Virus record (IMG/VR): IMGVR_UViG_3300042516_005475
Location: 1 to 64,000 of that record
Reading direction: 5' to 3' (one strand)
Length of the DNA stretch: 64,000 nt
This document shows, piece after piece, positions 1 through 64,000 of this stretch; the stretch's first letter is position 1, and every line of letters starts with the position of its first letter. The position numbers were made by a program, and so were the translations under genes. Below the pieces are notes generated by a model. That model searched no databases, was not told where the DNA came from, and saw only the letters and a list, made by a program, of their open reading frames with translations.

Positions 1-1089
1 AGCAGCACCACGGCGGTGACGAACTGCAATTCTGTTTGCTTCAACGATCAACTTCTGATAGAAGTCGCGATTACGCTCAGCCAACCAGCGACCGTCAGCA
101 GCAGAAGCTGTCCAGCTTGTTACGGAACCGTAAGAAGCATACTTCAAGCAGACTTGGATCATTCTGATGACCATTTCACGATCGATTTCAGCCTGGAGCT
201 CATAGCTCATGGCGTTTGTCAATTCAGCATCGATATCGATACCGTTCATGTTCTTCAAGTCCTGCTCCAACTCAACAGACCAACGAGCAGCTAGTCTGCG
301 GGTACCAGCTTCAACGGCTGTCTTCTCGAAGGAGATAGAAGCTGTTGGGATCTGAGAAGTGAACTCGTAGTTGGCTAGCAACTGAGCAACACCTTGATCA
401 GAATCAATAATCTGGAAGTTGGTGTTGTTTTCATATGCTGCTAATTCAGCAGAAGAAGCACCAGTGAAACGGGTGTCTAGGTATTGGTAACCAAGTTCAC
501 CAGAATAGGTACCACCGAACGTACCAGTGTTACCTGGGCTCACTACACCAGCAGCAGCAGCCTGCCATGGGTAAGGTCCAGGGTTGCCGTAGGCAGCATC
601 ATTGTACTTGCCTGGGATCTGGCTACCTAGTACGTCATTGTCGTACTTGTAACGTAGAGCGAAGGCGAGACCAACTGGACCGCTCATTGGCTGAACACCA
701 ACGATTTCGTTAGTGATCAACTCAGGGAAGGTACGGCGGATCATTGGAATGAGGATCTTTGGCAAACGAGCATCACCGGTAGCATACCAGTCAGCATTCG
801 TATCGCCAGTAGAGTTGTTTACGGCTGCACCGTAACCACCCATACCACCTACTGCACCGTATGCGCCACCGAAAGCTGATTGAGTAGATCCAGAAACGTT
901 AGCGCCGGATTCTTCAATGCACCATCTCTCTTGGTTCTCAAGAAGAATGGCAGTGTTAAGACGTGTGTGATCGTCTTCGATGTTTCTCACGTTCTTGCTG
1001 TTAAAATCAAGAACAGGTGACCACTTCTCAAGAAGAGCGCCAGCTCTATCTGGAGAAATATATGACTGTGAAGGTCTGATATTTTTCAT
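1..1089 (-). CDS. gp23: Major capsid protein, T4 gp23-like (5' part; runs off the window start)
   Basis: Not in the ORF track because it is open at the edge. Manual translation from ATG 1089 gives MKNIRPSQSYISPDRAGALLEKWSPVLD...TAILLENQE...LIPMIRRTFPELITNEIVGVQPMSGPVGLAFALRY, which are gp23 motifs. It follows the scaffold gene. Confidence 0.95.
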   Translation of the reverse strand, partial: MKNIRPSQSYISPDRAGALLEKWSPVLDFNSKNVRNIEDDHTRLNTAILLENQERWCIEESGANVSGSTQSAFGGAYGAVGGMGGYGAAVNNSTGDTNADWYATGDARLPKILIPMIRRTFPELITNEIVGVQPMSGPVGLAFALRYKYDNDVLGSQIPGKYNDAAYGNPGPYPWQAAAAGVVSPGNTGTFGGTYSGELGYQYLDTRFTGASSAELAAYENNTNFQIIDSDQGVAQLLANYEFTSQIPTASISFEKTAVEAGTRRLAARWSVELEQDLKNMNGIDIDAELTNAMSYELQAEIDREMVIRMIQVCLKYASYGSVTSWTASAADGRWLAERNRDFYQKLIVEANRIAVRHRRGAA

Positions 1090-1160
1090 ATGTTTATTTA
1101 TTTTTAGACATTATATGATGTCAAATCATAATCAGGCTTATGCCTCAATGGAAATTTATT

Positions 1161-2066
1161 TTAGTGTCTTGATAGCTCCTGCATGTACAACTTCAATGGA
1201 GGGTGATCAGAAGCTTCTGATGTACCTTCCTCGATTACCTGTTGAGTATTTTCAACTACAGGGCGATCAAGATTTCTAGAAACAGACTGTGATACAGCTT
1301 GCTCGGTTAGAGTCTCGATGTTCTTAGCTTCTTGCTTTTCAAACATCTTGCTTGTATAGTCATAGTTTTCTTTAATGAATTCAGCAGACTTACCCTTGAA
1401 TACCTTGGCCAAATATGCCTTCTTGTTATCAGATAAACCAGCTGTCTTCTGTTCAAAAATTAAATTAGAGACTGCTCTATTGTAAGATTCATTGAGCTGC
1501 TTGTTATCAGCCTTAAGAGCCTCAATGATCTTGGAGCTTTCATCAATCTTTTGCTTACCATCCAATACGGCTTCGCGAATTGATTCTTTACCGAGTACTA
1601 GATCGATAGAAAGCATGCTGCGTAGTTCGTTTAGAACTTGAGCAGAGCGTCTGTTTTGTACAGCCTCTTCAATGGCTGTCTTTGGCAAGTTCTCATCGAG
1701 GTATGACTCGAGATAGTTGGAAATTGATTCAACAAGAGATTGCTTGAATGATGCAGCATCCTCATTGAGAGCCTTCTCGTACTTGCGTACAACAGTCTTG
1801 AGTTTACCAGCATGGTTCTCGTTGATTGCTTCAACAACCTTCAAAAGCTTCTCAGAGTGATTACGGTCAATAGCCTCAACGAGCTTCTCTACCTTGGCAG
1901 AGTGATCTTCGTCGATTTGTACCAATAAACTCTCGAGTTGCAATTTTGCACGATCTTCAGCAGCCTTGTTTACTTGCTGCTCGAATGCCTCAGAAATTTG
2001 ATTTAGTGATTCCTCACTAAGAATATCCTTGGTAACTTCCTTTAATTTTTCAATTAGAGCTGACAT
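1161..2066 (-). CDS. gp22: Prohead core scaffolding protein, gp22-like
   Basis: Acidic coiled-coil protein of 301 aa with LVESISNYLESYLDE; lies between protease and MCP. Confidence 0.85.
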   Translation of the reverse strand: MSALIEKLKEVTKDILSEESLNQISEAFEQQVNKAAEDRAKLQLESLLVQIDEDHSAKVEKLVEAIDRNHSEKLLKVVEAINENHAGKLKTVVRKYEKALNEDAASFKQSLVESISNYLESYLDENLPKTAIEEAVQNRRSAQVLNELRSMLSIDLVLGKESIREAVLDGKQKIDESSKIIEALKADNKQLNESYNRAVSNLIFEQKTAGLSDNKKAYLAKVFKGKSAEFIKENYDYTSKMFEKQEAKNIETLTEQAVSQSVSRNLDRPVVENTQQVIEEGTSEASDHPPLKLYMQELSRH

Positions 2067-2069
2067 ATG

Positions 2070-2214: not shown

Positions 2215-2889
2215 TTATTTAAGCTTATTGATAAAAATTAATACTTGCTCTCTCAAATATTTATCCACATCTTTGCGAGGCAAGTTACCAATAGACTTTT
2301 CAAACTTATTATAAGCCTCTTCTAGATCACCAGTATCACTTAAAATCCATTGTTTAGACTCTAGAATACCGTTAACAAATGCTTTGGGACATGAAGGATC
2401 TGCAACTACGTCAATAGCAACAAGCTTCATGTTCTTTACTCTATTTACATCTTCTTTAATAGAGTCTGGTTCTAATTGACCTAAACATCTTGTTGAGACG
2501 CCAGGAGTAACTCCATCATCAATAAGATTTTGTACAATCTTACCCATTGGAGTACTTAGAACGAGGGACTTTCCTACAAAGTAATTACCTTCTTGTCTTA
2601 AATTTTGGACACTGTGACAGGCTCTTGCTAGATCAATATCAACAGTGGTTGGGTGGTTTAGTTCTCCTAATGCTCTACCTGACTTAATCATCTCATCGGA
2701 ATATCTCTTTACTTCAGAGACCATTTCCATTAAATCATATAGACGTCTATTTTTATTGACCTCGTTTGCCATCATGAAAGGCCCTTCGATGTATAATCTT
2801 GGCCCTTTCCCGTCGCGCAGATTCTTTTCCTCTTTAATATAAGTAAAGCTGCCGAAATCAGGAGTTTCAACTAATAGTCTGTGTGGCAT
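2215..2889 (-). CDS. gp21: Prohead protease, gp21-like
   Basis: LYIEGPFMMANEVNKNRRLY, ALGELNHP, GVSTRCLG and DVVADPS motifs. Confidence 0.95.
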   Translation of the reverse strand: MPHRLLVETPDFGSFTYIKEEKNLRDGKGPRLYIEGPFMMANEVNKNRRLYDLMEMVSEVKRYSDEMIKSGRALGELNHPTTVDIDLARACHSVQNLRQEGNYFVGKSLVLSTPMGKIVQNLIDDGVTPGVSTRCLGQLEPDSIKEDVNRVKNMKLVAIDVVADPSCPKAFVNGILESKQWILSDTGDLEEAYNKFEKSIGNLPRKDVDKYLREQVLIFINKLK

Positions 2890-2927
2890 ATAATTATAAA
2901 ATTATTTATAGTAAACGTTAGTATTTT

Positions 2928-6076: not shown

Positions 6077-6117
6077 AAAATTATTTATTGTTTAGAACAT
6101 GTATTTCAATTTTATTA

Positions 6118-8162: not shown

Positions 8163-8193
8163 AGAAATATTTATAAGTAGTTTAGGCTTTTAT

Positions 8194-9081: not shown

Positions 9082-10729
9082 AGTATTGAGGTAGCTTATC
9101 CTTACACTTCATGAGCACAAACTTAATTGCCCCATCTAAGATATAAGTATCACAATGATCTTCTTCAGTTCTGATACCACGACCACAAGCCTGAACAAGA
9201 CTGCTTAGCATCTTATTCTCGTACCATTCAGGATCAAGCTTAAAGAGAGTTTCTACCCGCTTAGAGCCAAGTGGCAAGTAAGGTAGTTTCAACACAATCT
9301 GAAAGCGAGCTAGCTCATCCTTAAGATCAACCCCATGAGTAAGTGAAGGAGATACTAGAACAGTTGGCTTGTCAGACTCTACATGCTCTTTAACAATATC
9401 TTCGTTAGTTTTACCTGATTGACGGTAAAGCATTCGATCACCATAGTCATCAAATTTAGCTTTAACGTATTCAGTAATTTTAAACGAATGTGTATGAATA
9501 ATACCTTTATCGTTCTTATACTTGTCAACTAGCTCTTTTGCAATATTGCAAACATGAGGTAGGTTCTGTTCAAGGTTAGCATGATTTAGCTTATACTTAG
9601 TATGAACAAAAATTGGAGCCTTCTTAGGATCAAACGATGAAGGCATTTCAACATACTCATACTCTTCAATGCCAAGACTCTTAGCAAAATTAACTGGATC
9701 AATAATAGTTGCTGACATCAGAATAATCTTCTCACCATGATTAAAGATATGACTTGAGAGCTTATCAACCTTCAACGGAGAGAAGTTAACAGCTGTAGCA
9801 GACTTCTCAATCACATACTTACAATCATTCCAATGACCAGTAACAGTCTTAACAGAGTGCACAACATTATTCAAGCCACGAAGCTTATTTTGCTGAGCAT
9901 CAGAAAGCTCTTTCTTATTACGCTTTTCAGTTAGAATCTTGATTTGTTCTTCAATAACACACAATAGATTAGTAAGCCATTCAATGACTCGATTAGGTAC
10001 ATCAGTAGCTAGCTTTTGAGTATGAATTCCAAGCTGAGCCAAACGCTCATAGCTAATATCAAACCCGAAACGCTTTACCAATTCGTCTTCAAGCTCTGCA
10101 GCCTCATCACAAATCAAAAGCTCTTTACGCTTCAGTTGGTCTGGTAGAGCCAAAAACATACTATAATTAAGAATGCCAAAATTACTAGTAACAACTCGAT
10201 TACGAGCCTCATAGTACGGGCAAATACACTTTTTCCAGCAATCATCTTTAATCTTTCCAACAACAACACAAGGAGCAATTTCAACATCCTTAGTTTCATC
10301 AATTGTACATTGATAGTTAGATTTACCTTTTAAAATATCAGAATCATCAAAAAACTCCTTGTATTGGTTCTGCAAATTCTTTGAAATTGTCAATACCATT
10401 GAACCAAAAGGTTGTTGCTTATCAATTTCTTCTTGATTAGAGAATTCACCAGACTGATCCATCTGATAAATAGAATACGAATCAACCAAATGCTTAAAGT
10501 CTTTGCTACAAGAGTCAGTCAAGTTAGCTACAGTGCGAGAAATATAAGACTTACCTGAGCCTGTAGGCGCACATAGAATAAGAAACTTTTTATCTCCACG
10601 AAGAAACTTTTCAATCTTCTTTAAGACAGCAGCCTGCTGTGCTCGAGGGGTGTGGTTACTTGGAAATGCTGATAGGATGTCTTTCTGTTTCACTACGTTG
10701 AGTATAGCGTCACGTGAAATGAAAAGCAA
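9062..10729 (-). CDS. DinG/XPD-family SF2 helicase
   Basis: APTGSGKS Walker A, KGKSNYQC plus Cys cluster, ICDEAA, MSAT, GVDL, QACGRGIR. Confidence 0.85.
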   Translation of the reverse strand: MLFISRDAILNVVKQKDILSAFPSNHTPRAQQAAVLKKIEKFLRGDKKFLILCAPTGSGKSYISRTVANLTDSCSKDFKHLVDSYSIYQMDQSGEFSNQEEIDKQQPFGSMVLTISKNLQNQYKEFFDDSDILKGKSNYQCTIDETKDVEIAPCVVVGKIKDDCWKKCICPYYEARNRVVTSNFGILNYSMFLALPDQLKRKELLICDEAAELEDELVKRFGFDISYERLAQLGIHTQKLATDVPNRVIEWLTNLLCVIEEQIKILTEKRNKKELSDAQQNKLRGLNNVVHSVKTVTGHWNDCKYVIEKSATAVNFSPLKVDKLSSHIFNHGEKIILMSATIIDPVNFAKSLGIEEYEYVEMPSSFDPKKAPIFVHTKYKLNHANLEQNLPHVCNIAKELVDKYKNDKGIIHTHSFKITEYVKAKFDDYGDRMLYRQSGKTNEDIVKEHVESDKPTVLVSPSLTHGVDLKDELARFQIVLKLPYLPLGSKRVETLFKLDPEWYENKMLSSLVQACGRGIRTEEDHCDTYILDGAIKFVLMKCKDKLPQYFIQRFQ

Positions 10730-11045: not shown

Positions 11046-11059
11046 AAATATTAATTACA

Positions 11060-11437
11060 CTAAACGCGCATAAAGTCAATTTTTTGCTTCTCTGTCATAA
11101 AGGCTAGCTTCTCATTATAGTATTGCCAAAATTCATCATTAGCCTTTATTGTAGCTACAACTTGACAGGCTGCTACATTAACTTGTCTATAGTCTTGTTC
11201 AAAAATATCCCAGGTAACAACTAAACCTTTTAATTCTGGATTATAATCTAATTGCTGGTGTGGTGGGCGGTAGTTAAGAGCAACTCTACCCTTTGTGCTG
11301 TTTAAGAGAGAATAGCTGTTGGTACAAAGCATTCTTCTAAAAAGAGGTTCGCCAGGCTGCGGTCTGCGCCTGGCGAATTTAAGTTCTACTACGTTTTGCT
11401 GTAAGAGAAGTTTTAACTGATTTAGGCTTACTTTCAC
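11060..11437 (-). CDS. WYL-like/SH3-fold phage protein (DUF2693-like)
   Basis: VVELKFARR...RRMLCT...VVTWDIFEQDYRQV pattern. Confidence 0.55.
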   Translation of the reverse strand: MKVSLNQLKLLLQQNVVELKFARRRPQPGEPLFRRMLCTNSYSLLNSTKGRVALNYRPPHQQLDYNPELKGLVVTWDIFEQDYRQVNVAACQVVATIKANDEFWQYYNEKLAFMTEKQKIDFMRV

Positions 11438-11448
11438 CTAATTATTTA

Positions 11449-11886: not shown

Positions 11887-11908
11887 ATTTGTATATAGTT
11901 ATTATTAG

Positions 11909-12268
11909 TTACTTTTCAAGATGCTCTGCGTACATTTTAATCTCTCGCTGAGATAATTCAAGATTGCGAGCAAGCATTTCCAGATTTTCATCCTCCTTAG
12001 TCTTTTCTTTCTTTACTTTTTTAATGTATTCGATTTTCTTATATCGCATGCGAGGAATTACATTAATAAGAAACTTATTTTGTTCATCCTTAGACAAACA
12101 CATCCAATAGCGATTAGATGTTTCGTTAACAATAGTAGCAACTTCACCACTATGCATACTCAACCACCTATTAACAAGGAAAAACTGATACTCCCGCTCT
12201 TCTTCAACAGAAATATCAGTCTTCTTTTTTAACGTGGTGATATTAGTAATAATATCAAAAATCGTCAT
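11909..12268 (-). CDS. gp62: Clamp loader small subunit, gp62-like
   Basis: YQFFLVNRWLSM...QNKFLINVIPR...YIKK...LSQREIKMY. Confidence 0.75.
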   Translation of the reverse strand: MTIFDIITNITTLKKKTDISVEEEREYQFFLVNRWLSMHSGEVATIVNETSNRYWMCLSKDEQNKFLINVIPRMRYKKIEYIKKVKKEKTKEDENLEMLARNLELSQREIKMYAEHLEK

Positions 12269-12849: not shown

Positions 12850-14225
12850 GCGTTGATTCTAATATATTTTTCAGCGAGTTCAACTGAAACCTTTTCAAGT
12901 TTTAATTCTTCTAGCAGCTCTAATATTCCTACATTCCCACGCTTTGGATTTCTGCAGTCATAGAAATACAAATAATCGTCAATATAAACTTCATTCTCTG
13001 CAAATGAAGGTATAGCCAATGAATAGAATCTATCTTCTTGATCGTTCATCTCTGGAAAGAGAATATTCAGAGCAATAGATTTCTTAACAGGGGACAAATG
13101 GTTGGGGCAACGATAGTAGGTTACAGGTTGAGCTGATCCATCAATTGTACCCATTTTATGGCTCCAGTTCTTATGCTTCATTGTAATCTCAACACGTCTA
13201 GGAGTCTTACCATTGAAAGTAATAATACTGTTAAAACCAACAACATCAGGCTTGCTGTCAGTTGCTTTGAGAATTTTTTCGACATATTTTTCTGAAACCC
13301 AATCATCATCATCAATAAAAGCTATATACTCTCCTGATGCATTGTGAATTAAGTCGTTACGCTTCTTACCAATAGTTAGCTCTCTATTATCTTTTGCTAC
13401 AAGAATTTCTACTTCTGGGGTTAGTTGAGGTTTTAGTCTTGTTTTAAGGCGCTCAAGATAATTCTCTCTACCATTCACTGTGCAAATTAGCAAACTAAGT
13501 CTCTTGTAAGGCTTTGGAACAAATCTAGTATTCCATTTTTCTTTGAAGATAGCATGCTGAAAATCCATACTACATAAATTACGATCTTCTGCTTTAATAG
13601 TTCCATGAGACTTACTAAGCAAATGATGTATATGAGAGCTTGTACACAAGCCATGCTTCACATTGTAAGAGTTATACATCTCGACCCAGTCATTGTCTTG
13701 ATAATAAAAGGCAAAGCGTTCATCAAAACCACCTAAAATATTAAATAACTTTCTACGAATAATAAAACTCCAACCAGTAAACTCGTAAGAGGTTCTTGTT
13801 CCAATGTGAAGTTCTTTTAATGAGCTAAAGATAGACTCGGTATGTCTGTGCCACTTACGATCAATTGGGCTAACAGACATTAACTCAGGATCAATTTCAA
13901 ATTGTTTTGCAATAGCAGTAAACCAACCCTTGTAATAAATAACATCATTATTTGTAATTAGCACCAAATCGTTTTTACATTCTCTCAAACCAATGTTTAA
14001 GTATAGATTGTAATTAAATTTAGGTACTTGTGGGATAAGAAACTTTGCTCTTATTTCAGAAAGCTTGTGAGTAAACAAAGAAGAAACTTCTTTGCAAGAT
14101 TCAACAACAATTACGTTAAATTTATGCTCTGGTTCTGAATCATGAATAGAATCAACAGTTTGTTTAAGAATATCAAACAACTCGTTAGTAGTTGTGTTGC
14201 TAAGAATAATTACATCGACGTCCAT
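12846..14225 (-). CDS. Two-domain GT2 glycosyltransferase
   Basis: Domain 1: NNDV, GGFDERF...QDND. Domain 2: TIGKKRN, GEYIAFIDDDD, QED. Confidence 0.85.
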   Translation of the reverse strand: MDVDVIILSNTTTNELFDILKQTVDSIHDSEPEHKFNVIVVESCKEVSSLFTHKLSEIRAKFLIPQVPKFNYNLYLNIGLRECKNDLVLITNNDVIYYKGWFTAIAKQFEIDPELMSVSPIDRKWHRHTESIFSSLKELHIGTRTSYEFTGWSFIIRRKLFNILGGFDERFAFYYQDNDWVEMYNSYNVKHGLCTSSHIHHLLSKSHGTIKAEDRNLCSMDFQHAIFKEKWNTRFVPKPYKRLSLLICTVNGRENYLERLKTRLKPQLTPEVEILVAKDNRELTIGKKRNDLIHNASGEYIAFIDDDDWVSEKYVEKILKATDSKPDVVGFNSIITFNGKTPRRVEITMKHKNWSHKMGTIDGSAQPVTYYRCPNHLSPVKKSIALNILFPEMNDQEDRFYSLAIPSFAENEVYIDDYLYFYDCRNPKRGNVGILELLEELKLEKVSVELAEKYIRINA

Positions 14226-15719: not shown

Positions 15720-15780
15720 ACATTTTATTTTAAAGTAAAAATTTGGATTTTCAACTAAATATACATATATATCTTTGATT

Positions 15781-16675: not shown

Positions 16676-16680
16676 AGTAT

Positions 16681-16896
16681 TTATTTTTTGCAATGAAAAT
16701 TTAAAAACCAATTAGACTGTGCTTTTGTATGAGCAGTAGCCTTTTTGGTTTTTAGCTTTCTAGCCTTGCTACAAGTCATCTTGCCTTTACCGAATTTCTT
16801 GGTAGCTTTAGCTTTAAGAGTACCTTTACCACCTCGCGGAGTGGTGCGGGTGGTTTTTTCTAAAAGAGTAAAAAATCTCTTTTCGTACTTGTTCAC
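16681..16896 (-). CDS. Small basic late protein
   Basis: Lys/Arg-rich; GTG start 6 nt after TAAATA. Confidence 0.65.
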   Translation of the reverse strand: MNKYEKRFFTLLEKTTRTTPRGGKGTLKAKATKKFGKGKMTCSKARKLKTKKATAHTKAQSNWFLNFHCKK

Positions 16897-16937
16897 TACA
16901 ATTATTTATTCTTTTTAGTTTGTTCGCGCCAAAGATA

Positions 16938-18959: not shown

Positions 18960-18994
18960 GATACTATTATATAGTTCATGTATTGATAAATCTA

Positions 18995-44429: not shown

Positions 44430-45138
44430 ATTTGTTGACAAGTTTCTTACTCCCTTGTCTCGAATTAATAACTCCTGCTCATTACATCTCAAGGGTGATA
44501 AGCTAACGGCTCTAGTTGCTACTCCAGATGCATCAGTTATTTTGAATGCTGTCTGGAAGTTTAGTGATGATATTTCTGAAGAGAATAAGCTTAACATTCC
44601 AGACATTAATAAGTTTATTAAGGTTCTTGATTGTATCAGAGAAGATTATCTTTCTCTTAAGATTAACTCTAATAACATTAGTTACAATGAGAAGGGTATT
44701 AAGTTTAAGTATCATCTTCTTGAAGATGGTATTTTGTCTACTCCTGCTATTAACATTGAAAAGGTAAAGGCCTTGAAGTATGATACTGAGTTTAATATTG
44801 CTGGTCCTGACTTGCAATCATTGATCAAGAGCTCTACCTTTGCTTCAGAGACTGATAAGCTTTACATTAGAACGGGTGAAGGAATTGTTTACAGTGAGTT
44901 GACTGATAAGAACAAGTCTAATGTTGATTCTATTGAATTAGTATTGTCTCCAGAGTTCTCTGGTTCTGAGATTGATAATCCATTGGCTCTTAGCTTTGAG
45001 ATTATTCGTATTGTATCATGCAATCGCTTTGGTAATGTATCAACAAAGATTAATACTAACCTTGGAGTTTTGCTTTTTGAGCTAAATAATGATAACGTTG
45101 AACTCATCTATGTCGCATCAGGATTGGCAGAAACCTAA
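44401..45138 (+). CDS. gp45: Sliding clamp, gp45/PCNA-like
   Basis: 245 aa, two-domain beta/alpha pattern, IPDINKFIKVL; replication-module context. Confidence 0.7.
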   Translation: MTIPIHNKNEFVDKFLTPLSRINNSCSLHLKGDKLTALVATPDASVILNAVWKFSDDISEENKLNIPDINKFIKVLDCIREDYLSLKINSNNISYNEKGIKFKYHLLEDGILSTPAINIEKVKALKYDTEFNIAGPDLQSLIKSSTFASETDKLYIRTGEGIVYSELTDKNKSNVDSIELVLSPEFSGSEIDNPLALSFEIIRIVSCNRFGNVSTKINTNLGVLLFELNNDNVELIYVASGLAET

Positions 45139-45469: not shown

Positions 45470-45693
45470 CTACGGCTCTACAAGAAGAGCCAGACAGCGA
45501 ATTTAATAGAAACTGTAAAATGACTGTCGATTTTCTGGATCAGGTTCTGTCTAACTATATGGTTATTGGTTATGATTTAAACAATGTTCCATTTGTTATT
45601 TGCAATAACAGAACTCAGAAAGACGCTGATGCTCTTAAAACTCTCATAACAAAAGTTATGATGGGACAAGACTTGAACATCAAAAAAATCTAG
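45430..45693 (+). CDS. Hypothetical protein
   Basis: ORF in the operon. Confidence 0.55.
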   Translation: MDEKSRKELQKRLTTALQEEPDSEFNRNCKMTVDFLDQVLSNYMVIGYDLNNVPFVICNNRTQKDADALKTLITKVMMGQDLNIKKI

Positions 45694-45701
45694 TATATAA
45701 T
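45673..45701 (+). promoter_or_regulatory. Sigma70-type promoter
   Basis: TTGAAC-N17-TATAAT, with ATG 6 nt downstream. Confidence 0.65.
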
Positions 45702-46941: not shown

Positions 46942-47767
46942 TAGAGGAGAAAATGTTGGTGGGGTCTATTACTTTCTCAATTGTGTAAAGTCTTATACTA
47001 AGCAATATGAACCTGATCGCATTTTCGCAGCCTGGGATAAAAAGCTTACCTGGCCATCTTCTAACTTTCGTAAGGAGATGCTTACTGTTCAATACAAAGG
47101 TAATCGTAATTATACCCCTTTTGAGGGAGTTCACAACTATGATGATCTGATTCAACAAATGCTTTCAAATCTTAACATTAAGAACATTTATCCTAATGTT
47201 ATGGAAGCAGATGATGTAATTGCCTGGCTTTGTCATACCCTAGATGGAGAAAAAGTTGTAGTTTCAACTGATAAGGATATGTGGCAATTGGTTAATCAAG
47301 ATACAAAGATCTTCTTTCCAACTGGTAAGAAAGAGATTAATCTAGATAACTTTGCAAGAGAGGCTGGTATTGCTAAAGAGCATTACTTGCTTTACAAGTG
47401 TATTCTTGGTGATATTTCTGATAATGTTAAAGGGGTTGAAGGTTACGGTAAAGTAAAGGCAAAGAAGGTTGCTGAGAATGGAGTTTCTATGCTCACCGAA
47501 GAGCAACAACAGATTGTTCAGACTAATTTGAAGCTTTCTGATTTGCTTTATGGTTATCGATACTACCCTGAAGAGGAAATTTGCTACAAAGAGCAGATGG
47601 AACAACTCAAGGAGAATACTTTGGATATGGAATCTTTCAAAGATATTATTTCTTACTTAGAGCTTGATTCTATCACGAAAGATATTAACATTTGGGTCAA
47701 TACCTTCGAGAAAAAGAAAAACATCACTAAGTGTATAGAAGATTTGAAGAAGCGACTAAATATTTGA
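46862..47767 (+). CDS. rnh: 5'-3' exonuclease / T4 RNase H (FEN family)
   Basis: LILDCNN, YKGNR, EADDVIA, STDKD, GDISDNVKGV. Confidence 0.9.
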   Translation: MKTLILDCNNLLYRTFWLSKNKTLTNSRGENVGGVYYFLNCVKSYTKQYEPDRIFAAWDKKLTWPSSNFRKEMLTVQYKGNRNYTPFEGVHNYDDLIQQMLSNLNIKNIYPNVMEADDVIAWLCHTLDGEKVVVSTDKDMWQLVNQDTKIFFPTGKKEINLDNFAREAGIAKEHYLLYKCILGDISDNVKGVEGYGKVKAKKVAENGVSMLTEEQQQIVQTNLKLSDLLYGYRYYPEEEICYKEQMEQLKENTLDMESFKDIISYLELDSITKDINIWVNTFEKKKNITKCIEDLKKRLNI

Positions 47768-49427: not shown

Positions 49428-49431
49428 AGCT

Positions 49432-49443
49432 ATAAATATTTAT
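49432..49443. promoter_or_regulatory. Palindromic bidirectional late promoter ATAAATATTTAT
   Basis: Two overlapping TAAATA boxes in a 19-bp divergent gap. Confidence 0.65.
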
Positions 49444-49446: not shown

Positions 49447-49818
49447 ATGAAACGACTTTTATTCGAGGATATGGATATGTATTACAACAAATACAATGCC
49501 AATGTCGCTGCTCGAGATCTCAAGCCACCCACACATACTTTACAAGACTTACTAAACTATTTCACTAATCAATATCCAAACATTATTAGAGCACCTAAGC
49601 AGTACCCTGCTCCTCTAATTAATGCTGATACTAAGACTCTTGAAATGTATAACTTGGTATTAGATCTAAAGTCTAATATTCAGGCCTCTATGGGCAACCC
49701 AGTTATTAGAAAAAACCCTAAGTTACTAGCCAGAGCCAGCCATGCAGTTAAGTTATTGAACAGTGTGTTAAAGAGTATTATGACAGTTGATAAATTGCTC
49801 ATACATTATAAAATCTAG
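49447..49818 (+). CDS. Hypothetical late protein (N-terminus MKRLLFE)
   Basis: ORF after TATAAATA. Confidence 0.65.
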   Translation: MKRLLFEDMDMYYNKYNANVAARDLKPPTHTLQDLLNYFTNQYPNIIRAPKQYPAPLINADTKTLEMYNLVLDLKSNIQASMGNPVIRKNPKLLARASHAVKLLNSVLKSIMTVDKLLIHYKI

Positions 49819-50597: not shown

Positions 50598-50626
50598 TTG
50601 ACGAAACTTAACTTTCCCTCTATACT
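50598..50626 (+). promoter_or_regulatory. Sigma70-type promoter
   Basis: TTGACG-N17-TATACT, with GTG 6 nt downstream. Confidence 0.7.
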
Positions 50627-51985: not shown

Positions 51986-52016
51986 GTAATTATTTATGAT
52001 TTAAGTAGCAGTAAAC

Positions 52017-52958: not shown

Positions 52959-52978
52959 AAATAGTTTTAAATATTTAT

Positions 52979-55741
52979 ATGCCAGCCGAAGAAAATTACT
53001 ACTTAGGTAATAAAAATCTCCCCAAACCAGACACACAGTTCGATTGGACTCCGGAAATGCTCGAGCATTTGGAGAGAAGCCGTGATGATATTTTATATTT
53101 TGCCCAAACGTTCTTCTTTATTATCAACCTAGATAAAGGTAAACAGCTAATTAAACTGCATCCTTGTCAATTAAGAGTGCTAAAAACACTAGATGATGAG
53201 AGATTCGTATCTTTGCTAGCCTCCCGTCAATCTGGTAAAGCTTTAGCGCTTGATACACCTATACCTACCCCTAATGGTTGGACTACTATGGGTGATTTAA
53301 AGGCTGGGGATAAAGTTTATAGTAGTTCAGGACAACCTTGTAATGTTGTTATGGCTCATGAAATTCTTCATAATAGAAATTGTTATGAAGTTGAATTTGA
53401 TAACGGGGAAAAAATCGTTGCAGATGAAGAGCATTTATGGTTCACTCAATCAAGAACCGAACGAAGCAAAGATATTAGTGGTTCTGTAAAAAATACTAAA
53501 CAGCTTTTTGAGACGCTAACCTCCGGTAACAAAAAGAAAGAACCTAATCACAGAATACAAGTAAATGTAAATGGTGTTTGTGGAGAACACAAAGATTTAT
53601 TAATCGATCCTTATGTTCTTGGTTTATGGTTAGGTGATGGTAGTTCTAACTCCTCAGTTATTACTGTTGGTAAGAGAGACATTCACGATTTAATTGATAT
53701 ATTAAATACTCAGCACAAGCAATTTAATAAGATTATTTTAAATGAGTATAATAAAAGTGTATATAGTTTAAGATTGACTGTTGAAGATAAGGTTAAGACT
53801 AAATGTTTAAGCACCCTTTTAAATATAGCGAATTTAAAAGATAATAAACATATACCTGCAGAATATTTGTTAGCTAGCAGAGCACAGCGTTTAGAGTTAT
53901 TAAAGGGTCTTATAGATTCAGATGGTTATATTGATTCGAGAGGCAATGCTAACTTTTACAATACAAACATTGATTTGGTTAAACAGGTAAAGAAGTTAGT
54001 TGAAAGCTTAGGCTACAAGGTAACCTTTAAAACTTTTATACCAAAATTAAAAGGGGTAGAGTGTAAGGAATGTGGTGTTCTGTATTTTAAGCCTATAGAA
54101 TATGTTTGTAAACTAGCGTTTAAAAAAAATAGAATAAAAATTAAAGAGGATATTAATGATTCTAAGCTTAGAAATCAGTGGCATTACATAAAAAATATTA
54201 AATCTATTGACTCTGTTCCAGTAAGATGTATAACAGTCGATAGTGTTGATAGTTTATACTTGTGTGGAAATCAGTATATACCCACTCATAACACGACTCT
54301 AATGACAATCTATGCTCTTTGGATTGCATGCTTCAACAAGGATAAGAGGGTACTTGTTGTAGCAAACAAAGAGAAGACAGCGATTAACATCTTTCGTCGT
54401 ATCCGCACAGCCTATGAGATGTTACCGAACTACTTAAAACCGGGTGTTAAAGAGTATGGTAAAACATCTATAACCCTAGAAAATGATTCATCAATTGGTA
54501 TTTCGACTACAAGTTCAGATGCTGGTCGTGGTGATTCCGTAAACGTTCTAATCCTGGATGAGTTAGCATTCATTCCAAATAACATTGTTGATAAGTTCTG
54601 GAAATCAGTATACCCAATTATTTCTTCATCCAAACAATCTAAGATCTTCGTTGCTTCTACTCCTAATGGTACGAAGAATTTATTCTATGATTTGTATTCT
54701 GGAGCCATGGAGGGTAAGAACGGTTGGGCAGCAGAGCGCATTGATTGGTGGGAAATACCTGGTAGAGATGAAGTTTGGAAGCAAAATACAATCAGAGAGA
54801 TTGGTAGTGAAGAAACTTTCAATCAAGAGTTCGGCAACGAATTTATTGAAGTTGGAGAGAGTACTCTTTCAGACAAATTATACGAATTTCTTAAATCAAA
54901 TGTAGCTCCACCTTTGCATATATTCGATGACGGAGCATATAAGATGTGGGAGAATCCAAACAAGGCTAGCCTGTATGTTATAGGTGTAGATGTCGCTGAG
55001 GGTGTAGGTCAGAATGCTAGCTCAATAGAAGTATTTGACATTACAGATTTAGGAAACATTAGACAAGTAGCAGAGTATTGCAACAATAATATCAATCCCT
55101 ACACGTTCACTCAAAAGATCAATCAGATATGTAAGCATTGGGGTTCTCCTCCGGTTTTGATTGAGCGTAATAATCATGGTGGTGGTGTTTGTGATAACCT
55201 TAAAAACGAATACAACTACACGAAGATTGTAACCTATACCGTAAAAGCTGGCAAGCTACATTTTGACAGACCTGGTATTCATTCTCATACAAACACCAAG
55301 TACAAGTGTATGACCAATATGAGATATTGGTTGAATGAAACAATGAGAGTTAAGATTAAATCTGTTGATTTGCTCAACGAATTAAAGAGCTTCACCCGTA
55401 ACAAGAACGGTACTTGGAGTGCTAGATCTGGTGAGTTAGATGACAGAGTAATGGGTATGGCTTGGGCCTTAATTATTCTAGACAGAGAAGTTTGTGAGAA
55501 GTATTTTGAAGTTTTAGAGTTCGATAAGAATCAAAAACCATTCAAAATTAGGAGATTAAGCTATTCTCAACCAGGAGAGTTTGTTGATGATTTTGGCATA
55601 TTAACTAATAGAAAGATTGCTCAAAATGATGGAGAAGAAGACTTTAACGAAATGCCTTCTTTCTTTACTAACTTTGGTAATGAGCCAGAAAATCCAGAAA
55701 TGGATGATTTAATTTCACAAGGATGGGAGCGTTGGGGATAA
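52979..55741 (+). CDS. gp17: Terminase large subunit, gp17-like, containing an intein
   Basis: ASRQSGK|TT Walker A, ILDELAF, STPNG, FNQEF, GVDVAEG, IERNN, DDRVM. Confidence 0.95.
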   Translation: MPAEENYYLGNKNLPKPDTQFDWTPEMLEHLERSRDDILYFAQTFFFIINLDKGKQLIKLHPCQLRVLKTLDDERFVSLLASRQSGKALALDTPIPTPNGWTTMGDLKAGDKVYSSSGQPCNVVMAHEILHNRNCYEVEFDNGEKIVADEEHLWFTQSRTERSKDISGSVKNTKQLFETLTSGNKKKEPNHRIQVNVNGVCGEHKDLLIDPYVLGLWLGDGSSNSSVITVGKRDIHDLIDILNTQHKQFNKIILNEYNKSVYSLRLTVEDKVKTKCLSTLLNIANLKDNKHIPAEYLLASRAQRLELLKGLIDSDGYIDSRGNANFYNTNIDLVKQVKKLVESLGYKVTFKTFIPKLKGVECKECGVLYFKPIEYVCKLAFKKNRIKIKEDINDSKLRNQWHYIKNIKSIDSVPVRCITVDSVDSLYLCGNQYIPTHNTTLMTIYALWIACFNKDKRVLVVANKEKTAINIFRRIRTAYEMLPNYLKPGVKEYGKTSITLENDSSIGISTTSSDAGRGDSVNVLILDELAFIPNNIVDKFWKSVYPIISSSKQSKIFVASTPNGTKNLFYDLYSGAMEGKNGWAAERIDWWEIPGRDEVWKQNTIREIGSEETFNQEFGNEFIEVGESTLSDKLYEFLKSNVAPPLHIFDDGAYKMWENPNKASLYVIGVDVAEGVGQNASSIEVFDITDLGNIRQVAEYCNNNINPYTFTQKINQICKHWGSPPVLIERNNHGGGVCDNLKNEYNYTKIVTYTVKAGKLHFDRPGIHSHTNTKYKCMTNMRYWLNETMRVKIKSVDLLNELKSFTRNKNGTWSARSGELDDRVMGMAWALIILDREVCEKYFEVLEFDKNQKPFKIRRLSYSQPGEFVDDFGILTNRKIAQNDGEEDFNEMPSFFTNFGNEPENPEMDDLISQGWERWG
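53240..54292 (+). mobile_element. Intein (351 aa) with LAGLIDADG homing endonuclease; class 3 signature
   Basis: Begins ALALDTPIPTP and ends PVRCITV...PTHN before Thr; contains LGLWLGDG and LKGLIDSDG motifs. Confidence 0.9.
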
Positions 55742-55749
55742 ATATTAAC

Positions 55750-57120: not shown

Positions 57121-57157
57121 AAAACTTTCATTGCCGAAACATAAATAATTAAAACAT

Positions 57158-60315: not shown

Positions 60316-60348
60316 ATGCAATAATGTCTATAATCTATAAATAATTAC

Positions 60349-62063: not shown

Positions 62064-62763
62064 TATAATCAAAAATTCCTTAAGAACAAATTCCTTTTAC
62101 ATTCCAAGCCAGAACACATATGTAAATGGTTGCTCTCTTACTATTAAGCAATACAATGATTTGTTAGAGCTTGACGCAACACTTGAATTCGGCTTTGAGC
62201 AGTATATCAAACATTCTATCTTAACTGATAGCATTATAAAAGAAAATGTTGATAATTACGAAAGTCTGCTTTATTTTGACAAGCCATTCCTACTAGCTCA
62301 AATTAAATTAGCTCAAGAAAGCAACTTTCTAGGTTTTTCTTTGGGGGAATATAAAGAAGGTATTTCTAATAGAATTAGTACTGTAACCCTATCTTCATAC
62401 GAGGCAGTATACAACAGTAATAATCTTGTTATAAGCTTTGGGTTGAACACATTTAAAGATGTTCAGCTGATTAATAAAGAATATTTTGAAACATTAAACG
62501 GTAAGTACAATTTGGCTGGAGATGTAATATCATTAGAGATTTTCAAACACTTAAAAGAAATTTCTTATCTTAATCAAAGCATTGGTAGTGTAAGAAATAT
62601 TAAAGAGCTCAAACCATTAATTGATCAAATGCCTGCTGGCTTGGTTGAAACCTTTAATGGGTTGCTTAGTAAAGTAAACGAAGATATAAGAGAGCTTAAT
62701 AAGTTCGAAATTGACGGTGAAAACTTTGTTTTTAATCCTTCGCTAGAGTTTATGTTGTCGTAA
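62047..62763 (+). CDS. Putative baseplate hub protein (gp26-like)
   Basis: FYIPS...SLTIKQ...LLYFDKPFLLAQIK; tail-module position. Confidence 0.45.
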   Translation: MNELFNIIKNSLRTNSFYIPSQNTYVNGCSLTIKQYNDLLELDATLEFGFEQYIKHSILTDSIIKENVDNYESLLYFDKPFLLAQIKLAQESNFLGFSLGEYKEGISNRISTVTLSSYEAVYNSNNLVISFGLNTFKDVQLINKEYFETLNGKYNLAGDVISLEIFKHLKEISYLNQSIGSVRNIKELKPLIDQMPAGLVETFNGLLSKVNEDIRELNKFEIDGENFVFNPSLEFMLS

Positions 62764-62774
62764 TAAATATTTAC

Positions 62775-64000
62775 ATGGGTGTAAAAGATAGTAACACACA
62801 GGCTATAATAGATGCCATTACAAATCTTGTAAAAGAGACGCAGCAATCCAACCGTATTGTTGAAAGAGAGATTAAAAATCTAAGCGTCAACACCAAGTCT
62901 TACATTGAGAAAGCACAAAGTAGTGCAAACTTTGAAAAGGTTTTTGAGTCCTTTTCAAAAGAATTCTCTACAAATATATCTGAATCAATTAATGAAACTG
63001 TTAAAGATGCAAATGAGAAGACCTTTAAGCAGCTAAAAGAAGGTATTCAGTCTAAAAAGCAGGAGATAGAAAAAAGAAAAAAGGATTTAAAGAGCTCTGC
63101 ATCCCTTGGACCTGAGTTTCAAAAAGATCTTAACAAAAAAATTAAGCAATCTGAAAAAGAGTTAAGAGAGCTTATTGAAAACTACGATAAAACTGCTAGA
63201 ACAAACAACCAGAATTTAATTCAGCAGATTAGAGAATCTCAAGCTAAACTAACAGAAGAGCTTACTGGTGGTCTACAGGAATTTGGTAAATCTTCCTTTA
63301 AAAACTATGTAAAAGAAACAAACAATGTAGATGAAGCACTAGTAAAATATAAAAACGCTTTAAAAGAACAGTATACTTCCCTTGAAAAAAATGTAGAGAC
63401 AAGAAAAAAACTTGGCTTAACTGACAAGAAAATGGAAGAAATAAAAGAAGATCTTTATGATTCTTATTTTAAGGAACTAGAAGCTCAGGGTAACAGAGCA
63501 GATATTGATGAAAAGACAAGAAAAGTTCTCACTGACAAATTAAAGAGAGAGCAAATATTAGCTGGTAGATCTACCTATGAACAAACTTATGGTAAGACTT
63601 CTTCTATAGGCCAGCTAGCTGGTAGATTAGCTGATTTTACTACAAGTAGATACAAAAAGCAAGATCAAAATACCTCTGCTTTGGGTAAAGCCTTTAACGC
63701 AGGTTTAGGTGCTTTATTTAAAGGTAAAGATGCTAAGGAACCTTTCCTAGAAGCAGATAAAAACGACTTATCAACAAAACCATCTATTACTCAAAAAGAT
63801 ATAGAAGGTGGAGAAGGTAGCACTTATATTAAACCATATAGTGAATCAGAAAATAAAGAAACTGTTGAAACAGCTGAAGCAGATAAAATAGCAGCTGAAA
63901 ATGCAAATGCTTCTGTAAATCCTTCTGCTCAAGTAGAGGCTCTAGAAGCTATTCAACAATCATTTGAAGAAGCAAAAGAAAATGTACCGTTTAAGGTAGT
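62775..64000 (+). CDS. Long coiled-coil protein, possibly tape measure/hub (5' part; runs off the window end)
   Basis: Manual ORF MGVKDSNTQAIIDAITNLVKETQQ...; Lys/Glu-rich helical; TAAATA 5 nt before ATG. Confidence 0.55.
   Translation, partial: MGVKDSNTQAIIDAITNLVKETQQSNRIVEREIKNLSVNTKSYIEKAQSSANFEKVFESFSKEFSTNISESINETVKDANEKTFKQLKEGIQSKKQEIEKRKKDLKSSASLGPEFQKDLNKKIKQSEKELRELIENYDKTARTNNQNLIQQIRESQAKLTEELTGGLQEFGKSSFKNYVKETNNVDEALVKYKNALKEQYTSLEKNVETRKKLGLTDKKMEEIKEDLYDSYFKELEAQGNRADIDEKTRKVLTDKLKREQILAGRSTYEQTYGKTSSIGQLAGRLADFTTSRYKKQDQNTSALGKAFNAGLGALFKGKDAKEPFLEADKNDLSTKPSITQKDIEGGEGSTYIKPYSESENKETVETAEADKIAAENANASVNPSAQVEALEAIQQSFEEAKENVPFKV

What the first reader, a model, noticed from the sequence alone, without database searches (positions are those of the whole stretch)
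1087..62777. Systematically leaderless late transcripts: TAAATA box 5 nt before the start codon
Seen: TAAATA or TATAAATA ends exactly 5 nt before the start codon of gp23 (1089), gp20 (6076), gp15 (8162), 11437, tubulin (22426), 25039, 26767, 51985, terminase (52979), 55750, 60349 and 62775. It ends 6-7 nt before 16896, 21881 and 32013. No Shine-Dalgarno sequence fits in these gaps. Known: T4 gp55 recognises TATAAATA about one helical turn upstream of the transcription start, and gp55 is encoded here. Inference: transcription starts at or next to the first base of the start codon, so even the major capsid protein would be made from leaderless mRNA, unlike T4. This constrains the host and could let phage mRNAs escape a shut-off aimed at SD-led host translation.
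Basis: partly seen in the sequence, partly recalled or inferred. Interest (0 to 1): 0.82.

Follow-up and report, generated by a model that had tools for sequence, protein, structure and literature searches.

The report
Phage promoters abutting start codons
In this uncultured T4-like water phage, early and late promoters alike sit so close to start codons that the first gene of most operons should be made from mRNA with no leader and no ribosome-binding site; this is unlike T4, implies an unusual host translation system, and is predicted from sequence only.

Summary
TAAATA ends exactly 5 nt before an ORF-opening ATG or GTG at 13-14 sites, where about 1 is expected by the distance background and 0.25 by shuffling. 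It is the top hexamer-distance pair in an unbiased scan. A gp55 late-sigma homologue is encoded. The boxed genes of known function are mostly virion or packaging genes, and relatives with about 50-77% protein identity keep the box and its spacing.

The T4 box spans -13 to -6, so a 5-nt spacer puts +1 on the first base of the start codon. Sixteen sigma70-type promoters (TTGAxx, 16-18 nt, TAnnAT) in front of replication and nucleotide-metabolism genes end 5-7 nt (mostly 6) before ATG or GTG, which is also leaderless geometry. No gene in the window has a Shine-Dalgarno sequence (0 of 82).

The leaderless layout therefore covers the whole genome and probably reflects the host, not a late-gene trick to escape shut-off. 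T4, cyanophages S-PM2 and B3, and most of pelagiphage HTVC008M keep leaders of 14-45 nt.

Two weak points remain. No transcription start is mapped, because the metatranscriptome contigs gave no resolution. The gp23 box is not conserved in close relatives. This is a new variant of a known kind.

The parts
1095..1100 (-). Late box (AATAAATA), 5 nt before the gp23 ATG at 1089
   Evidence: Weakest site: the box is not conserved in close relatives.
2216..2221 (-). Late box, 5 nt before the ATG at 2210 (46-aa ORF between gp21 and gp22)
   Evidence: Box and spacing are kept in 7 relatives.
6082..6087 (-). Late box, 5 nt before the portal (gp20) ATG at 6076
   Evidence: Conserved at d=5 in relatives with 77-97% identity while flanks and spacer vary. 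d=6 in L082.
8168..8175 (-). TATAAATA, 5 nt before the gp15 GTG at 8162
   Evidence: Distant-clade orthologues have the box at d=6.
11443..11448 (-). Late box, 5 nt before the GTG at 11437 (125 aa, function unknown)
   Evidence: The L082 orthologue keeps d=5 and GTG.
16678..16683 (-). Late box, 5 nt before the ATG at 16672 (71 aa)
16903..16908 (-). Late box, 6 nt before the GTG at 16896 (71 aa)
21868..21873 (+). Late box, 7 nt before the ATG at 21881 (178 aa)
22413..22420 (+). TATAAATA, 5 nt before the tubulin/TubZ-like ATG at 22426
25045..25052 (-). TATAAATA, 5 nt before the ATG at 25039 (153 aa)
26773..26778 (-). Late box, 5 nt before the ATG at 26767 (82 aa)
32001..32006 (+). Late box, 6 nt before the ATG at 32013 (glycosyltransferase-like, 420 aa)
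47757..47762 (+). Late box, 6 nt before the ATG at 47769 (67-aa ORF)
51991..51996 (-). Late box, 5 nt before the GTG at 51985 (111 aa, upstream of a head-completion gene). A terminator-like hairpin lies at 52024-52047 just upstream.
52968..52973 (+). Late box, 5 nt before the large-terminase ATG at 52979. A TATAAATA on the other strand (52972-52979) lies 13 nt before the divergent ATG at 52958.
55739..55744 (+). Late box, 5 nt before the ATG at 55750. Its TAA is the terminase stop codon.
60336..60343 (+). TATAAATA, 5 nt before the ATG at 60349 (tail-tube-like, 299 aa)
62764..62769 (+). Late box, 5 nt before the ATG at 62775 (more than 407 aa)
2903..2910 (-). TATAAATA, 13 nt before the gp21 protease ATG at 2889; predicted 8-nt leader
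   Evidence: A spacing of 12-13 nt is kept in most relatives, including distant ones; L011 is about 3 nt shorter.
57142..57147 (+). Late box, 10 nt before the tail-sheath ATG at 57158; predicted 5-nt leader
49431..49442 (.). Palindromic TATAAATATTTA in a 19-nt divergent gap. It gives a late box 8 nt before the ATG at 49447 (+) and 9 nt before the ATG at 49427 (-).
21158..21185 (+). Sigma70-type promoter TTGACT-16-TATAAT, 6 nt before the ATG at 21192 (GTP cyclohydrolase)
26779..26807 (+). TTTGCA-17-TATAAT, 6 nt before the uvsY ATG at 26814
35883..35912 (+). TTGAAA-18-TATATT, 6 nt before the ATG at 35919. This suggests 35919, not 35913, is the start.
36292..36319 (+). TTGAAT-16-TATAAT, 7 nt before the uvsX ATG at 36327
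37566..37594 (+). TTGCCC-17-TATACT, 6 nt before the queC ATG at 37601
45673..45701 (+). TTGAAC-17-TATAAT, 6 nt before the ATG at 45708 (sugar epimerase/reductase)
49787..49814 (+). TTGATA-16-TAAAAT, 5 nt before the ATG at 49820
50598..50626 (+). TTGACG-17-TATACT, 6 nt before the GTG at 50633
25584..25611 (-). TTGAAT-16-TACAAT, 6 nt before the GTG at 25577
10701..10729 (-). TTGCTT-17-TATACT, 7 nt before the helicase GTG at 10693
   Evidence: L012 has TTGACT-16-TATAAT, then 6 nt, then GTG.
12856..12883 (-). TTGAAC-16-TAGAAT, 6 nt before the ATG at 12849
   Evidence: The -35/-10/6-7 nt/ATG geometry is kept in distant relatives although the sequences differ.
15727..15754 (-). TTGAAA-16-TAAAAT, 7 nt before the ATG at 15719 (2OG-Fe oxygenase)
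20399..20426 (-). TTGAAC-16-TATCAT, 6 nt before the queE ATG at 20392
11892..11919 (-). TTGAAA-16-TATATA, 5 nt before the ATG at 11886
11052..11079 (-). TTGACT-16-TAATTA, 6 nt before the GTG at 11045
18966..18994 (-). TAGATT-17-TATAAT, 6 nt before the ATG at 18959 (thymidylate-kinase-like)
28701..29162 (+). gp55 homologue (late sigma factor). The start is uncertain: 28581, 28656 or 28701.
   Evidence: phrog_234, E = 3.3e-27. Gene order is uvsY-uvsW-55-47-46.
44401..45138 (+). gp45-like sliding clamp (activator of late transcription in T4)
   Evidence: phrog_223, E = 2.7e-8.

Best explanation
The window belongs to an uncultured, deeply branching T4-like phage of fresh water, with a contig of about 230 kb. 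In it, the promoter of nearly every transcription unit is fused to the first start codon.

Late units, mostly virion and packaging genes among those with a known function, carry a gp55-type box, (A/T)ATAAATA. It has no -35 element and is followed by an AT-rich 5-nt spacer. Early and replication units carry host-type TTGAxx, 16-18 nt, TAnnAT promoters whose -10 hexamer ends 6 nt (range 5-7) before the start.

The T4 late box occupies -13 to -6 and the sigma70 -10 hexamer occupies -12 to -7. Both spacings therefore put +1 on the A or G of ATG or GTG. The first cistron would then be translated from a leaderless mRNA, or one with a leader of at most 2 nt. Downstream cistrons would start by stop-start overlap or on A-rich junctions without SD.

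No gene uses a Shine-Dalgarno sequence. The architecture therefore most likely mirrors an SD-independent, leaderless-proficient translation system in the unknown host, not a late-phase takeover device.

Shown here: motif, spacing statistics, the split between gene classes, conservation in relatives, absence of SD, and presence of gp55 and gp45. Inferred: the position of the transcription start, translation from a 5'-terminal AUG or GUG, and the host property.
For: - Distance peak: 13 TAAATA sites at d=5 against about 1 at other distances. It is the top hexamer-by-distance pair. On curated starts, 14 hits against a shuffle mean of 0.25.
- An independent second peak: full -35/-10 promoter matches end 6 nt before ORF-opening starts 11 times, against a background of about 2. 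Sixteen such promoters were verified. Thirteen of 15 listed have TTG at 16-17 nt spacing. The tool's best promoter-like hits end 5-7 nt before gene starts.
- The 1-nt offset between the two classes (5 against 6) matches the known positions of the two elements: A(-13) as first base of the T4 box (PMC2988020), and the standard -12 to -7 hexamer (my own knowledge).
- Class split: boxed genes include gp23, gp20, gp15, TerL and a tube-like protein, plus tubulin and a glycosyltransferase. Sigma70-type genes include a helicase, uvsY, uvsX, queC, queE, folE and an epimerase.
- gp55 and gp45 are encoded.
- Conservation: box plus 5-6 nt plus ATG/GTG is kept at the portal, gp15, the 11437-like gene and 2210, and in distant-clade orthologues of about 50% identity. 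The -35/-10/6-7 nt/ATG layout of gene 12849 is kept although the sequences have diverged.
- No SD: 1 of 82 starts has a 4-nt core. The dG profile is flat, whereas T4, HTVC008M and S-PM2 show troughs.
- Promoter-abutted starts are only ATG or GTG. GTG occurs at 8 of 35 of them against 2 of 47 other starts (p = 0.016). This fits a purine at +1 and the RTG rule of leaderless translation in mycobacteria (PMC4633059).
Against: - No transcription start is mapped. The only RNA data are metatranscriptome contigs. They cross the gp23 ATG by 37, 96 and 228 nt. Read-through RNA, or contaminating DNA, therefore exists, and gp23 is not exclusively leaderless.
- The gp23 box is not conserved in close relatives. 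Hairpin-like blocks and a TATAAT at -26 to -21 are invariant there.
- Seven boxes lie 8-13 nt from the start (gp21 protease, sheath and others), so some late mRNAs would have leaders of 3-8 nt.
- Start codons were partly chosen with knowledge of the motifs, although the mechanical scans do not depend on that choice.
- The host is unknown, so the host-property claim is untested.
Confidence: 0.72

Rival explanations
1. Leaderless expression is a late-gene speciality that lets phage late mRNAs keep being translated while SD-led host translation is shut off. Thermus phage phiYS40 is reported to work this way: its middle and late mRNAs are leaderless, with IF2 raised and IF3 lowered.
For: Late boxes at d=5 are real. 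There is a precedent in phiYS40 (review PMC3594737 citing Sevostyanova 2007).
Against: Sixteen early/replication-type sigma70 promoters are equally fused to start codons. Internal cistrons also lack SD, so phage translation as a whole is SD-free from the start of infection. No translation-factor or ribosomal-protein gene was found in the window.
Confidence: 0.1
2. The A/T-rich box is not a promoter. It is a translation signal that replaces SD at a fixed distance, for example a site for ribosomal protein S1 or for an unusual 16S tail. The real promoters would lie further upstream.
For: There is no SD anywhere, so some other signal might be expected. Several boxes lie right after, or overlap, the upstream stop codon in tightly packed operons (gaps of 4-11 nt). 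Metatranscriptome contigs cross the gp23 box.
Against: The box equals the T4 gp55 consensus, including the A(-13) variant. Among genes of known function it is found mostly before virion or late genes, and before none of the 29 tightly coupled internal genes. The parallel class with bona fide -35 elements at 16-18 nt shows the same geometry, offset by exactly 1 nt. Spacings of 8-13 nt also occur.
Confidence: 0.08
3. The box marks an endonuclease processing site. Cleavage of polycistronic late transcripts there would produce mRNAs that start at or near the start codon.
For: Read-through across gene junctions is seen. Boxes occur inside operons.
Against: No evidence for such a nuclease was found. 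The sequence is identical to a known promoter class whose sigma factor is encoded here. It does not explain the sigma70-type class.
Confidence: 0.03
4. Artefact. The pattern would come from AT-rich intergenic composition, from stop codons (TAA) inside the motif, or from biased choice of start codons.
For: TAAATA is not over-represented overall. In 3 of 14 sites the TAA of the box is the upstream stop codon (gap of 8 nt).
Against: Scans that do not depend on the choice of start codon give the same sharp peak. Shuffles of the upstream regions give 0.25 against 14 observed. Orthologous N-termini align from residue 1 with the box kept. T4, S-PM2 and B3, of similar AT content, show no such peak.
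Confidence: 0.02

Closest known systems
T4 late promoters (gp55 sigma, gp33 co-activator, gp45 clamp)
   Same: An 8-bp TATAAATA box with A allowed at -13, no conserved -35 and an AT-rich segment downstream. It lies in front of virion genes. gp55 and gp45 homologues are encoded.
   Different: In T4 the box lies 14-28 nt (up to about 49 nt) before start codons and the leaders carry SD. Here it lies 5 nt before them with no SD. gp33 was not found in the window.
Thermus phage phiYS40 middle and late leaderless mRNAs
   Same: A phage whose middle and late transcripts mostly lack leaders (PMC3594737).
   Different: It is an unrelated phage with a different promoter type, and its host phylum (Deinococcus-Thermus) is known to be rich in leaderless genes. 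In phiYS40 the leaderless layout is reported for the middle and late classes and linked to IF2/IF3 changes. Here both early-type and late promoters are fused to start codons.
-10 region adjacent to ORFs in Deinococcus-Thermus, and leaderless genes of mycobacteria
   Same: The -10 element sits a fixed short distance from the start codon. ATG or GTG at the 5' end is sufficient. A -35 at 17 bp strengthens the promoter (PMC12340547; PMC4633059).
   Different: Those organisms still use SD for leadered genes. This phage has none at all, and its GC content is 36%.
Late promoters of cyanomyoviruses (S-PM2, B3) and pelagiphage HTVC008M
   Same: They are the nearest cultured relatives (portal at most 33% identical, terminase 35%). 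They have the same ATAAATA/CTAAATA box and a gp55 gene.
   Different: In S-PM2 and B3 the box is 18-45 nt upstream, often with GGAG-like sequences. HTVC008M is mostly SD-led but has three d=5 sites in the stretch examined, two of them before annotated genes.
Lambda cI mRNA from PRM (classic leaderless phage mRNA)
   Same: Transcription starts at the A of the AUG (my own knowledge; cited in PMC12340547 as Shean and Gottesman 1992).
   Different: That is a single regulatory gene in an SD-using host, not a genome-wide layout.

Membership tests
T4-type gp55-dependent late promoter | 8-bp TATAAATA box (A tolerated at the first position) | tested here: met
   Of 14 d=5 sites, all 14 have TAAATA and 12 have A before it. 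The first position is A in 6, T in 5, C in 2 and G in 1. T4 consensus from PMC2988020.
T4-type gp55-dependent late promoter | No conserved -35 element; AT-rich segment just downstream of the box | tested here: met
   The position matrix shows no conservation from -30 to -14. The spacer from -5 to -1 is about 84% A/T overall.
T4-type gp55-dependent late promoter | Phage encodes gp55 (late sigma) and a sliding clamp | tested here: met
   28701-29162, phrog_234, E = 3e-27. 44401-45138, phrog_223, E = 3e-8.
T4-type gp55-dependent late promoter | gp33 co-activator | tested here: inconclusive
   No PHROG hit among the window's small ORFs. Only 64 kb of about 230 kb was examined.
T4-type gp55-dependent late promoter | Drives late (virion) genes; box about one helical turn upstream of a mapped start | not testable with these tools
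   The gene class fits. No timing or TSS data exist, and the contigs gave no resolution.
Leaderless mRNA | Primary 5' end coincides with the first base of the start codon (5' UTR of 0 to a few nt) | not testable with these tools
   Inferred from geometry only. Metatranscriptome contigs cross the gp23 start.
Leaderless mRNA | Promoter -10-type element at a fixed distance of about 5-7 nt from the start codon | tested here: met
   Peaks at d=5 for the late box and d=6 for the sigma70 -10 hexamer.
Leaderless mRNA | ATG or GTG start, no SD | tested here: met
   All 35 promoter-abutted starts are ATG or GTG. 0 of 82 genes have an anti-SD dG of -6 kcal/mol or lower.
Sigma70-type promoter (early class) | TTGACA-like -35, 16-18 nt spacer, TATAAT-like -10 | tested here: met
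   Sixteen sites verified. Independent tool hits.
phiYS40-like translational takeover | Leaderless layout restricted to middle/late classes, with changes in initiation factors | tested here: not met
   Early-type promoters are equally leaderless. Initiation-factor levels cannot be tested.

The most novel reading that the evidence does not exclude
A whole clade of uncultured aquatic T4-like phages, from fresh water and the sea, with portal proteins 52-100% identical, expresses its genome without any Shine-Dalgarno sequence. Both host-sigma and gp55 promoters are fused to start codons, so the first cistron of most transcription units is leaderless. This would be the first T4-type late-transcription system rebuilt for leaderless output. 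It would also point to an abundant but unidentified bacterial host lineage that has canonical sigma70 promoters yet SD-independent translation able to start at a 5'-terminal AUG or GUG.
Probability: 0.55. Interest if true: 0.7.

Novelty: new variant of a known kind. Interest (0 to 1): 0.6.

Why it matters
- It shows that the T4 late-promoter module (gp55 box) can be moved to within 5 nt of the start codon. Leader and SD are then lost, so the T4 model of leadered late mRNAs is not universal among T4-like phages.
- The combination of zero SD, canonical -35/-10 promoters and ATG/GTG at +1 is a strong sequence-only constraint on the unknown host of an abundant aquatic phage clade.
- The geometry gives a practical rule for annotating this clade: box plus 5 nt, or -10 hexamer plus 6 nt, marks the true start codon. 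It favours 35919 over 35913, 10693 over 10729 and 25039 over 25060. Standard gene callers that look for an RBS will misplace these starts.
- The roughly 35 predicted start sites are directly testable in existing river and lake metatranscriptomes.

Tried and rejected
- Direct RNA evidence. One read-laying run on window 100-6099 used four metatranscriptomes. Only assembled contigs were available. gp23 has a depth of 9-11 against 3-5 for the upstream gene in runs X1 and X2, but the contigs cross the ATG.
- Host identification. Neither of two scans of genome contigs helped. The first found nothing. The second found three contigs in MAGs labelled Bacteriovoracaceae, archaeon and Bacteroidetes. These labels disagree and probably reflect mis-binned phage DNA. 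The window has no tRNA and no Rfam hit. An Atlas search with the sugar epimerase returned mostly viral clusters and no consistent cellular source.
- Close cultured relatives. There is no megablast hit in INPHARED. The best protein identities are 33-35%, to cyanomyoviruses.
- A Bacteroidetes host was considered because that phylum is SD-poor. It seems unlikely, because the early promoters look like TTGACA/TATAAT. The -33/-7 consensus of Bacteroidetes is recalled from my own knowledge and was not scanned for.
- A SAR11 host is disfavoured, because the SAR11 phage HTVC008M shows clear SD use.
- An actinobacterial host is disfavoured on my own knowledge that leadered actinobacterial genes use SD; this was not tested.
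- Literature. Nine full-text searches found no description of T4-type late promoters abutting start codons.
- PHROG and Pfam scans of the small boxed ORFs found no ribosomal protein or translation factor.

Full report
WHAT THE WINDOW IS

The window is a 64-kb piece, at 36% GC, of a deeply branching T4-like phage. It encodes:
- gp23 (1-1089, minus strand), a gp22-like scaffold, the gp21 protease, gp14, gp13, the gp20 portal (4265-6076) and gp15;
- helicases, gp62, PhoH, queC/D/E plus folE, and a TubZ-like tubulin (22426-23532);
- uvsY, uvsW, gp55 (28701-29162), gp47, gp46, a B-family DNA polymerase, uvsX, a DnaB-like helicase, gp32, a gp45-like clamp and a primase;
- a large terminase carrying a LAGLIDADG intein (52979-55741), the tail sheath and tube proteins.

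INPHARED holds no near-identical DNA. The nearest cultured phages are cyanomyoviruses, with 33% portal identity and 35% terminase identity. IMG/VR holds identical to 77%-identical contigs, one of them 230 kb long, and a second group with 51-56% portal identity. I take these groups to be freshwater and marine respectively; no sample metadata were available. River and lake metatranscriptomes contain the sequence.

CHECK OF THE OBSERVATION

TAAATA is not over-represented in the window: 85 copies against 99 +/- 9 in shuffles. Its position is what is extraordinary.
- Counting, for each TAAATA on either strand, any ATG/GTG/TTG downstream that opens at least 50 codons gives 13 at a distance of exactly 5 nt, 3 at 6 nt and 1 at 7 nt. 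Every other distance up to 40 gives 0-4. The Poisson probability is about 6e-10.
- A scan of all 4096 hexamers at all distances from 0 to 25 ranks TAAATA at 5 nt first. The result therefore does not depend on choosing the motif or the start codons.
- On 82 curated starts there are 14 hits at d=5 and 18 at d=5-7. Shuffles of the upstream 30 nt give means of 0.25 and 0.74.

WHAT THE BOX IS

Aligned on the start codon, the 14 d=5 sites read (A/T/c)ATAAATA. An AT-rich 5-mer follows and nothing is conserved further upstream. This matches the published description of T4 late promoters: an 8-bp TATA box, A at -13 in nine T4 promoters, an AT-rich segment downstream and no -35 (PMC2988020).

A gp55 homologue (phrog_234, E = 3e-27) and a gp45-like clamp are encoded. 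Boxed genes with a known function are mostly virion or packaging genes: gp23, portal, gp15, terminase, a tube-like protein and the operon holding a head-completion gene. Tubulin and a glycosyltransferase are also boxed.

In relatives, the box and its 5-nt spacing persist at the portal, gp15 (GTG), 11437 (GTG) and 2210, while the spacer letters and flanks change. In the group with about 50% identity, orthologues of gp15, the gp13-like gene, the 11437-like gene and, in L082, the portal carry the box at 5-6 nt. Several of these have GTG starts.

WHY THE GEOMETRY MEANS LEADERLESS

The first base of the T4 box is -13. The box therefore spans -13 to -6, positions -5 to -1 are the five spacer bases, and +1 is the first base of the start codon.

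There is an independent internal control. Host-type promoters (TTGAxx, 16-18 nt, TAnnAT) precede the replication and nucleotide-metabolism genes: helicase 10693, uvsY, uvsX, queC, queE, folE, the epimerase and others. Sixteen were verified, and several are the best hits of the promoter scanner. The distance from the end of their -10 hexamer to an ORF-opening start peaks at 6 nt, with 11 cases against a background of about 2. The -10 hexamer occupies -12 to -7 (my own knowledge), so this too puts +1 on the start codon.

The two promoter classes thus differ by exactly the 1 nt expected if both are positioned to start transcription at the start codon. For gene 12849 the -35/16 nt/-10/6-7 nt/ATG layout is kept in relatives whose promoter letters have diverged.

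All 35 promoter-abutted starts are ATG or GTG. GTG is more frequent there: 8 of 35 against 2 of 47 (p = 0.016). This fits a purine at +1 and the rule that ATG or GTG at the 5' end suffices, established in mycobacteria (PMC4633059). The caveat is that some starts were curated with the motifs in view.

NO SHINE-DALGARNO ANYWHERE

- One of 82 starts has a 4-nt SD core between -20 and -5, against 5.4 expected at random positions.
- The anti-SD duplex-energy profile is flat, and 0 of 82 genes reach -6 kcal/mol. The same script gives a trough of -4.6 kcal/mol in T4 (14 of 36 genes), -3.5 in pelagiphage HTVC008M (14 of 32) and -1.7 in S-PM2 (10 of 41).
- Twenty-nine internal genes start within 6 nt of the upstream stop codon or overlap the upstream gene. 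Their upstream sequence is A-rich, with T at -1.

Early-type genes are leaderless too, and internal cistrons are also SD-free. The idea that late mRNAs escape a shut-off of SD-led translation is not needed. The parsimonious reading is a host that translates without SD and handles 5'-terminal start codons well.

Phyla reported as SD-poor include Cyanobacteria, Bacteroidetes, Planctomycetes and Chlorobi (PMC5397173). The TTGACA/TATAAT-like early promoters argue against Bacteroidetes (my own knowledge). The host stays unknown.

COMPARISON WITH RELATIVES

- T4, 50 kb of the late region: TATAAATA lies 14-28 nt, up to about 49 nt, from start codons, and never 5 nt.
- S-PM2: TAAATA lies mostly 19-37 nt away, with none at 5-8 nt.
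- Synechococcus phage B3: 18-45 nt, often with GGAG-like leaders.
- HTVC008M: mostly SD-led, but with three d=5 sites, two of them before annotated genes (locus L086, starts at 15560 and 15831). Isolated leaderless late genes may therefore exist in cultured T4-likes.
- The 51-56% group keeps TAAATA at 5-6 nt and TATAAT at 6-7 nt as the commonest distances.

WEAK POINTS

1. No transcription start is mapped. The single read-laying run returned only assembled metatranscriptome contigs. gp23 has a depth of 9-11 against 3-5 for gp22 in two runs, which fits an extra promoter near gp23. However, contigs run 37, 96 and 228 nt past the ATG, so read-through RNA or contaminating DNA exists.
2. In relatives with 91-94% identity the six bases read AAAATA or AAAGTA. 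Meanwhile AGGC-n4-GCCT, ATGAT-TTGAC-ATCAT and a TATAAT at -26 to -21 are invariant.
3. Seven boxes lie 8-13 nt from the start (gp21 protease at 13 nt and mostly conserved there, sheath at 10 nt, and others). These would give leaders of 3-8 nt.
4. Nine genes have neither a recognisable promoter at leaderless distance nor tight coupling to the upstream gene. One of them, 59678, has an AAGGA about 10 nt upstream.

WHAT IS KNOWN AND WHAT IS NEW

Leaderless phage mRNAs are known. Examples are lambda cI and, as a class, the middle and late transcripts of Thermus phage phiYS40, with IF2 raised and IF3 lowered (PMC3594737). ORFs abutted by a -10 element are common in Deinococcus-Thermus (PMC12340547) and in mycobacteria (PMC4633059). 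Nine full-text searches found no description of T4-type gp55 promoters fused to start codons, or of an SD-free T4-like genome.

VERDICT

I file this as a new variant of a known kind. It is a genome-wide and clade-wide architecture, not a late-gene device. Confidence in the leaderless mechanism is about 0.7, pending 5'-end mapping.

Noticed in passing
window 52979-55741 (+): The large terminase is 920 aa long. It carries a LAGLIDADG/Hom_end homing-endonuclease domain (residues about 303-365) ahead of the Terminase_6N match, which suggests an intein or inserted endonuclease.
   Followed up: partly
window 19661-21848 and 37601-38311: A 7-deazaguanine pathway is present: queE, queD, folE (GTP cyclohydrolase) and queC. 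It suggests modified DNA bases. Each of queE, folE and queC has its own sigma70-type promoter at leaderless distance.
   Followed up: partly
window 22426-23532 (+): A TubZ/PhuZ-like tubulin in a T4-like genome lies behind a perfect TATAAATA box. This would make it a late gene.
   Followed up: partly
window 1090-1160 (-): The gp22-gp23 intergenic region has invariant blocks in relatives: AGGC-n4-GCCT (1134-1146, loop variable), ATGAT-TTGAC-ATCAT, and TATAAT at -26 to -21 from the ATG. These may be RNA hairpins or another control element for gp23.
   Followed up: partly
window 49428-49446 and 52959-52978: Two divergent gene pairs are separated by only 19-20 nt. The gaps are filled by overlapping late boxes on both strands, including the palindromic TATAAATATTTATA. 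These look like bidirectional late promoters.
   Followed up: partly
window 2070-2210 (-): A 46-codon ORF between gp21 and gp22 has its own late box at 5 nt. It is 89-96% conserved in seven relatives, so it is probably a real small late protein.
   Followed up: partly
window 25604-26014 (-): This ORF matches homing-endonuclease and 'NAD synthetase' PHROGs. It may be a mobile endonuclease.
   Followed up: no
L086 (Pelagibacter phage HTVC008M), starts at 15560 and 15831: A cultured, SD-using T4-like phage also has ATAAATA or CTAAATA exactly 5 nt before two annotated ATGs. Occasional leaderless late genes may be overlooked in known phages.
   Followed up: partly
L082 (CAYOWH010000002.1), L083 (NYZO01000119.1): Relatives of this phage sit in MAGs labelled Bacteriovoracaceae (a 118-kb contig) and 'archaeon'. 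These are probably mis-binned phage contigs. L082 has 7 TAAATA sites at d=5 in 21 kb.
   Followed up: partly
window 43798-43826 (+), 52024-52047 (-), 23627-23650 (+): Strong terminator-like hairpins lie after gp32, before the 51985 late unit and after the tubulin gene. They delimit transcription units that restart at once with a start-codon-abutted promoter.
   Followed up: no
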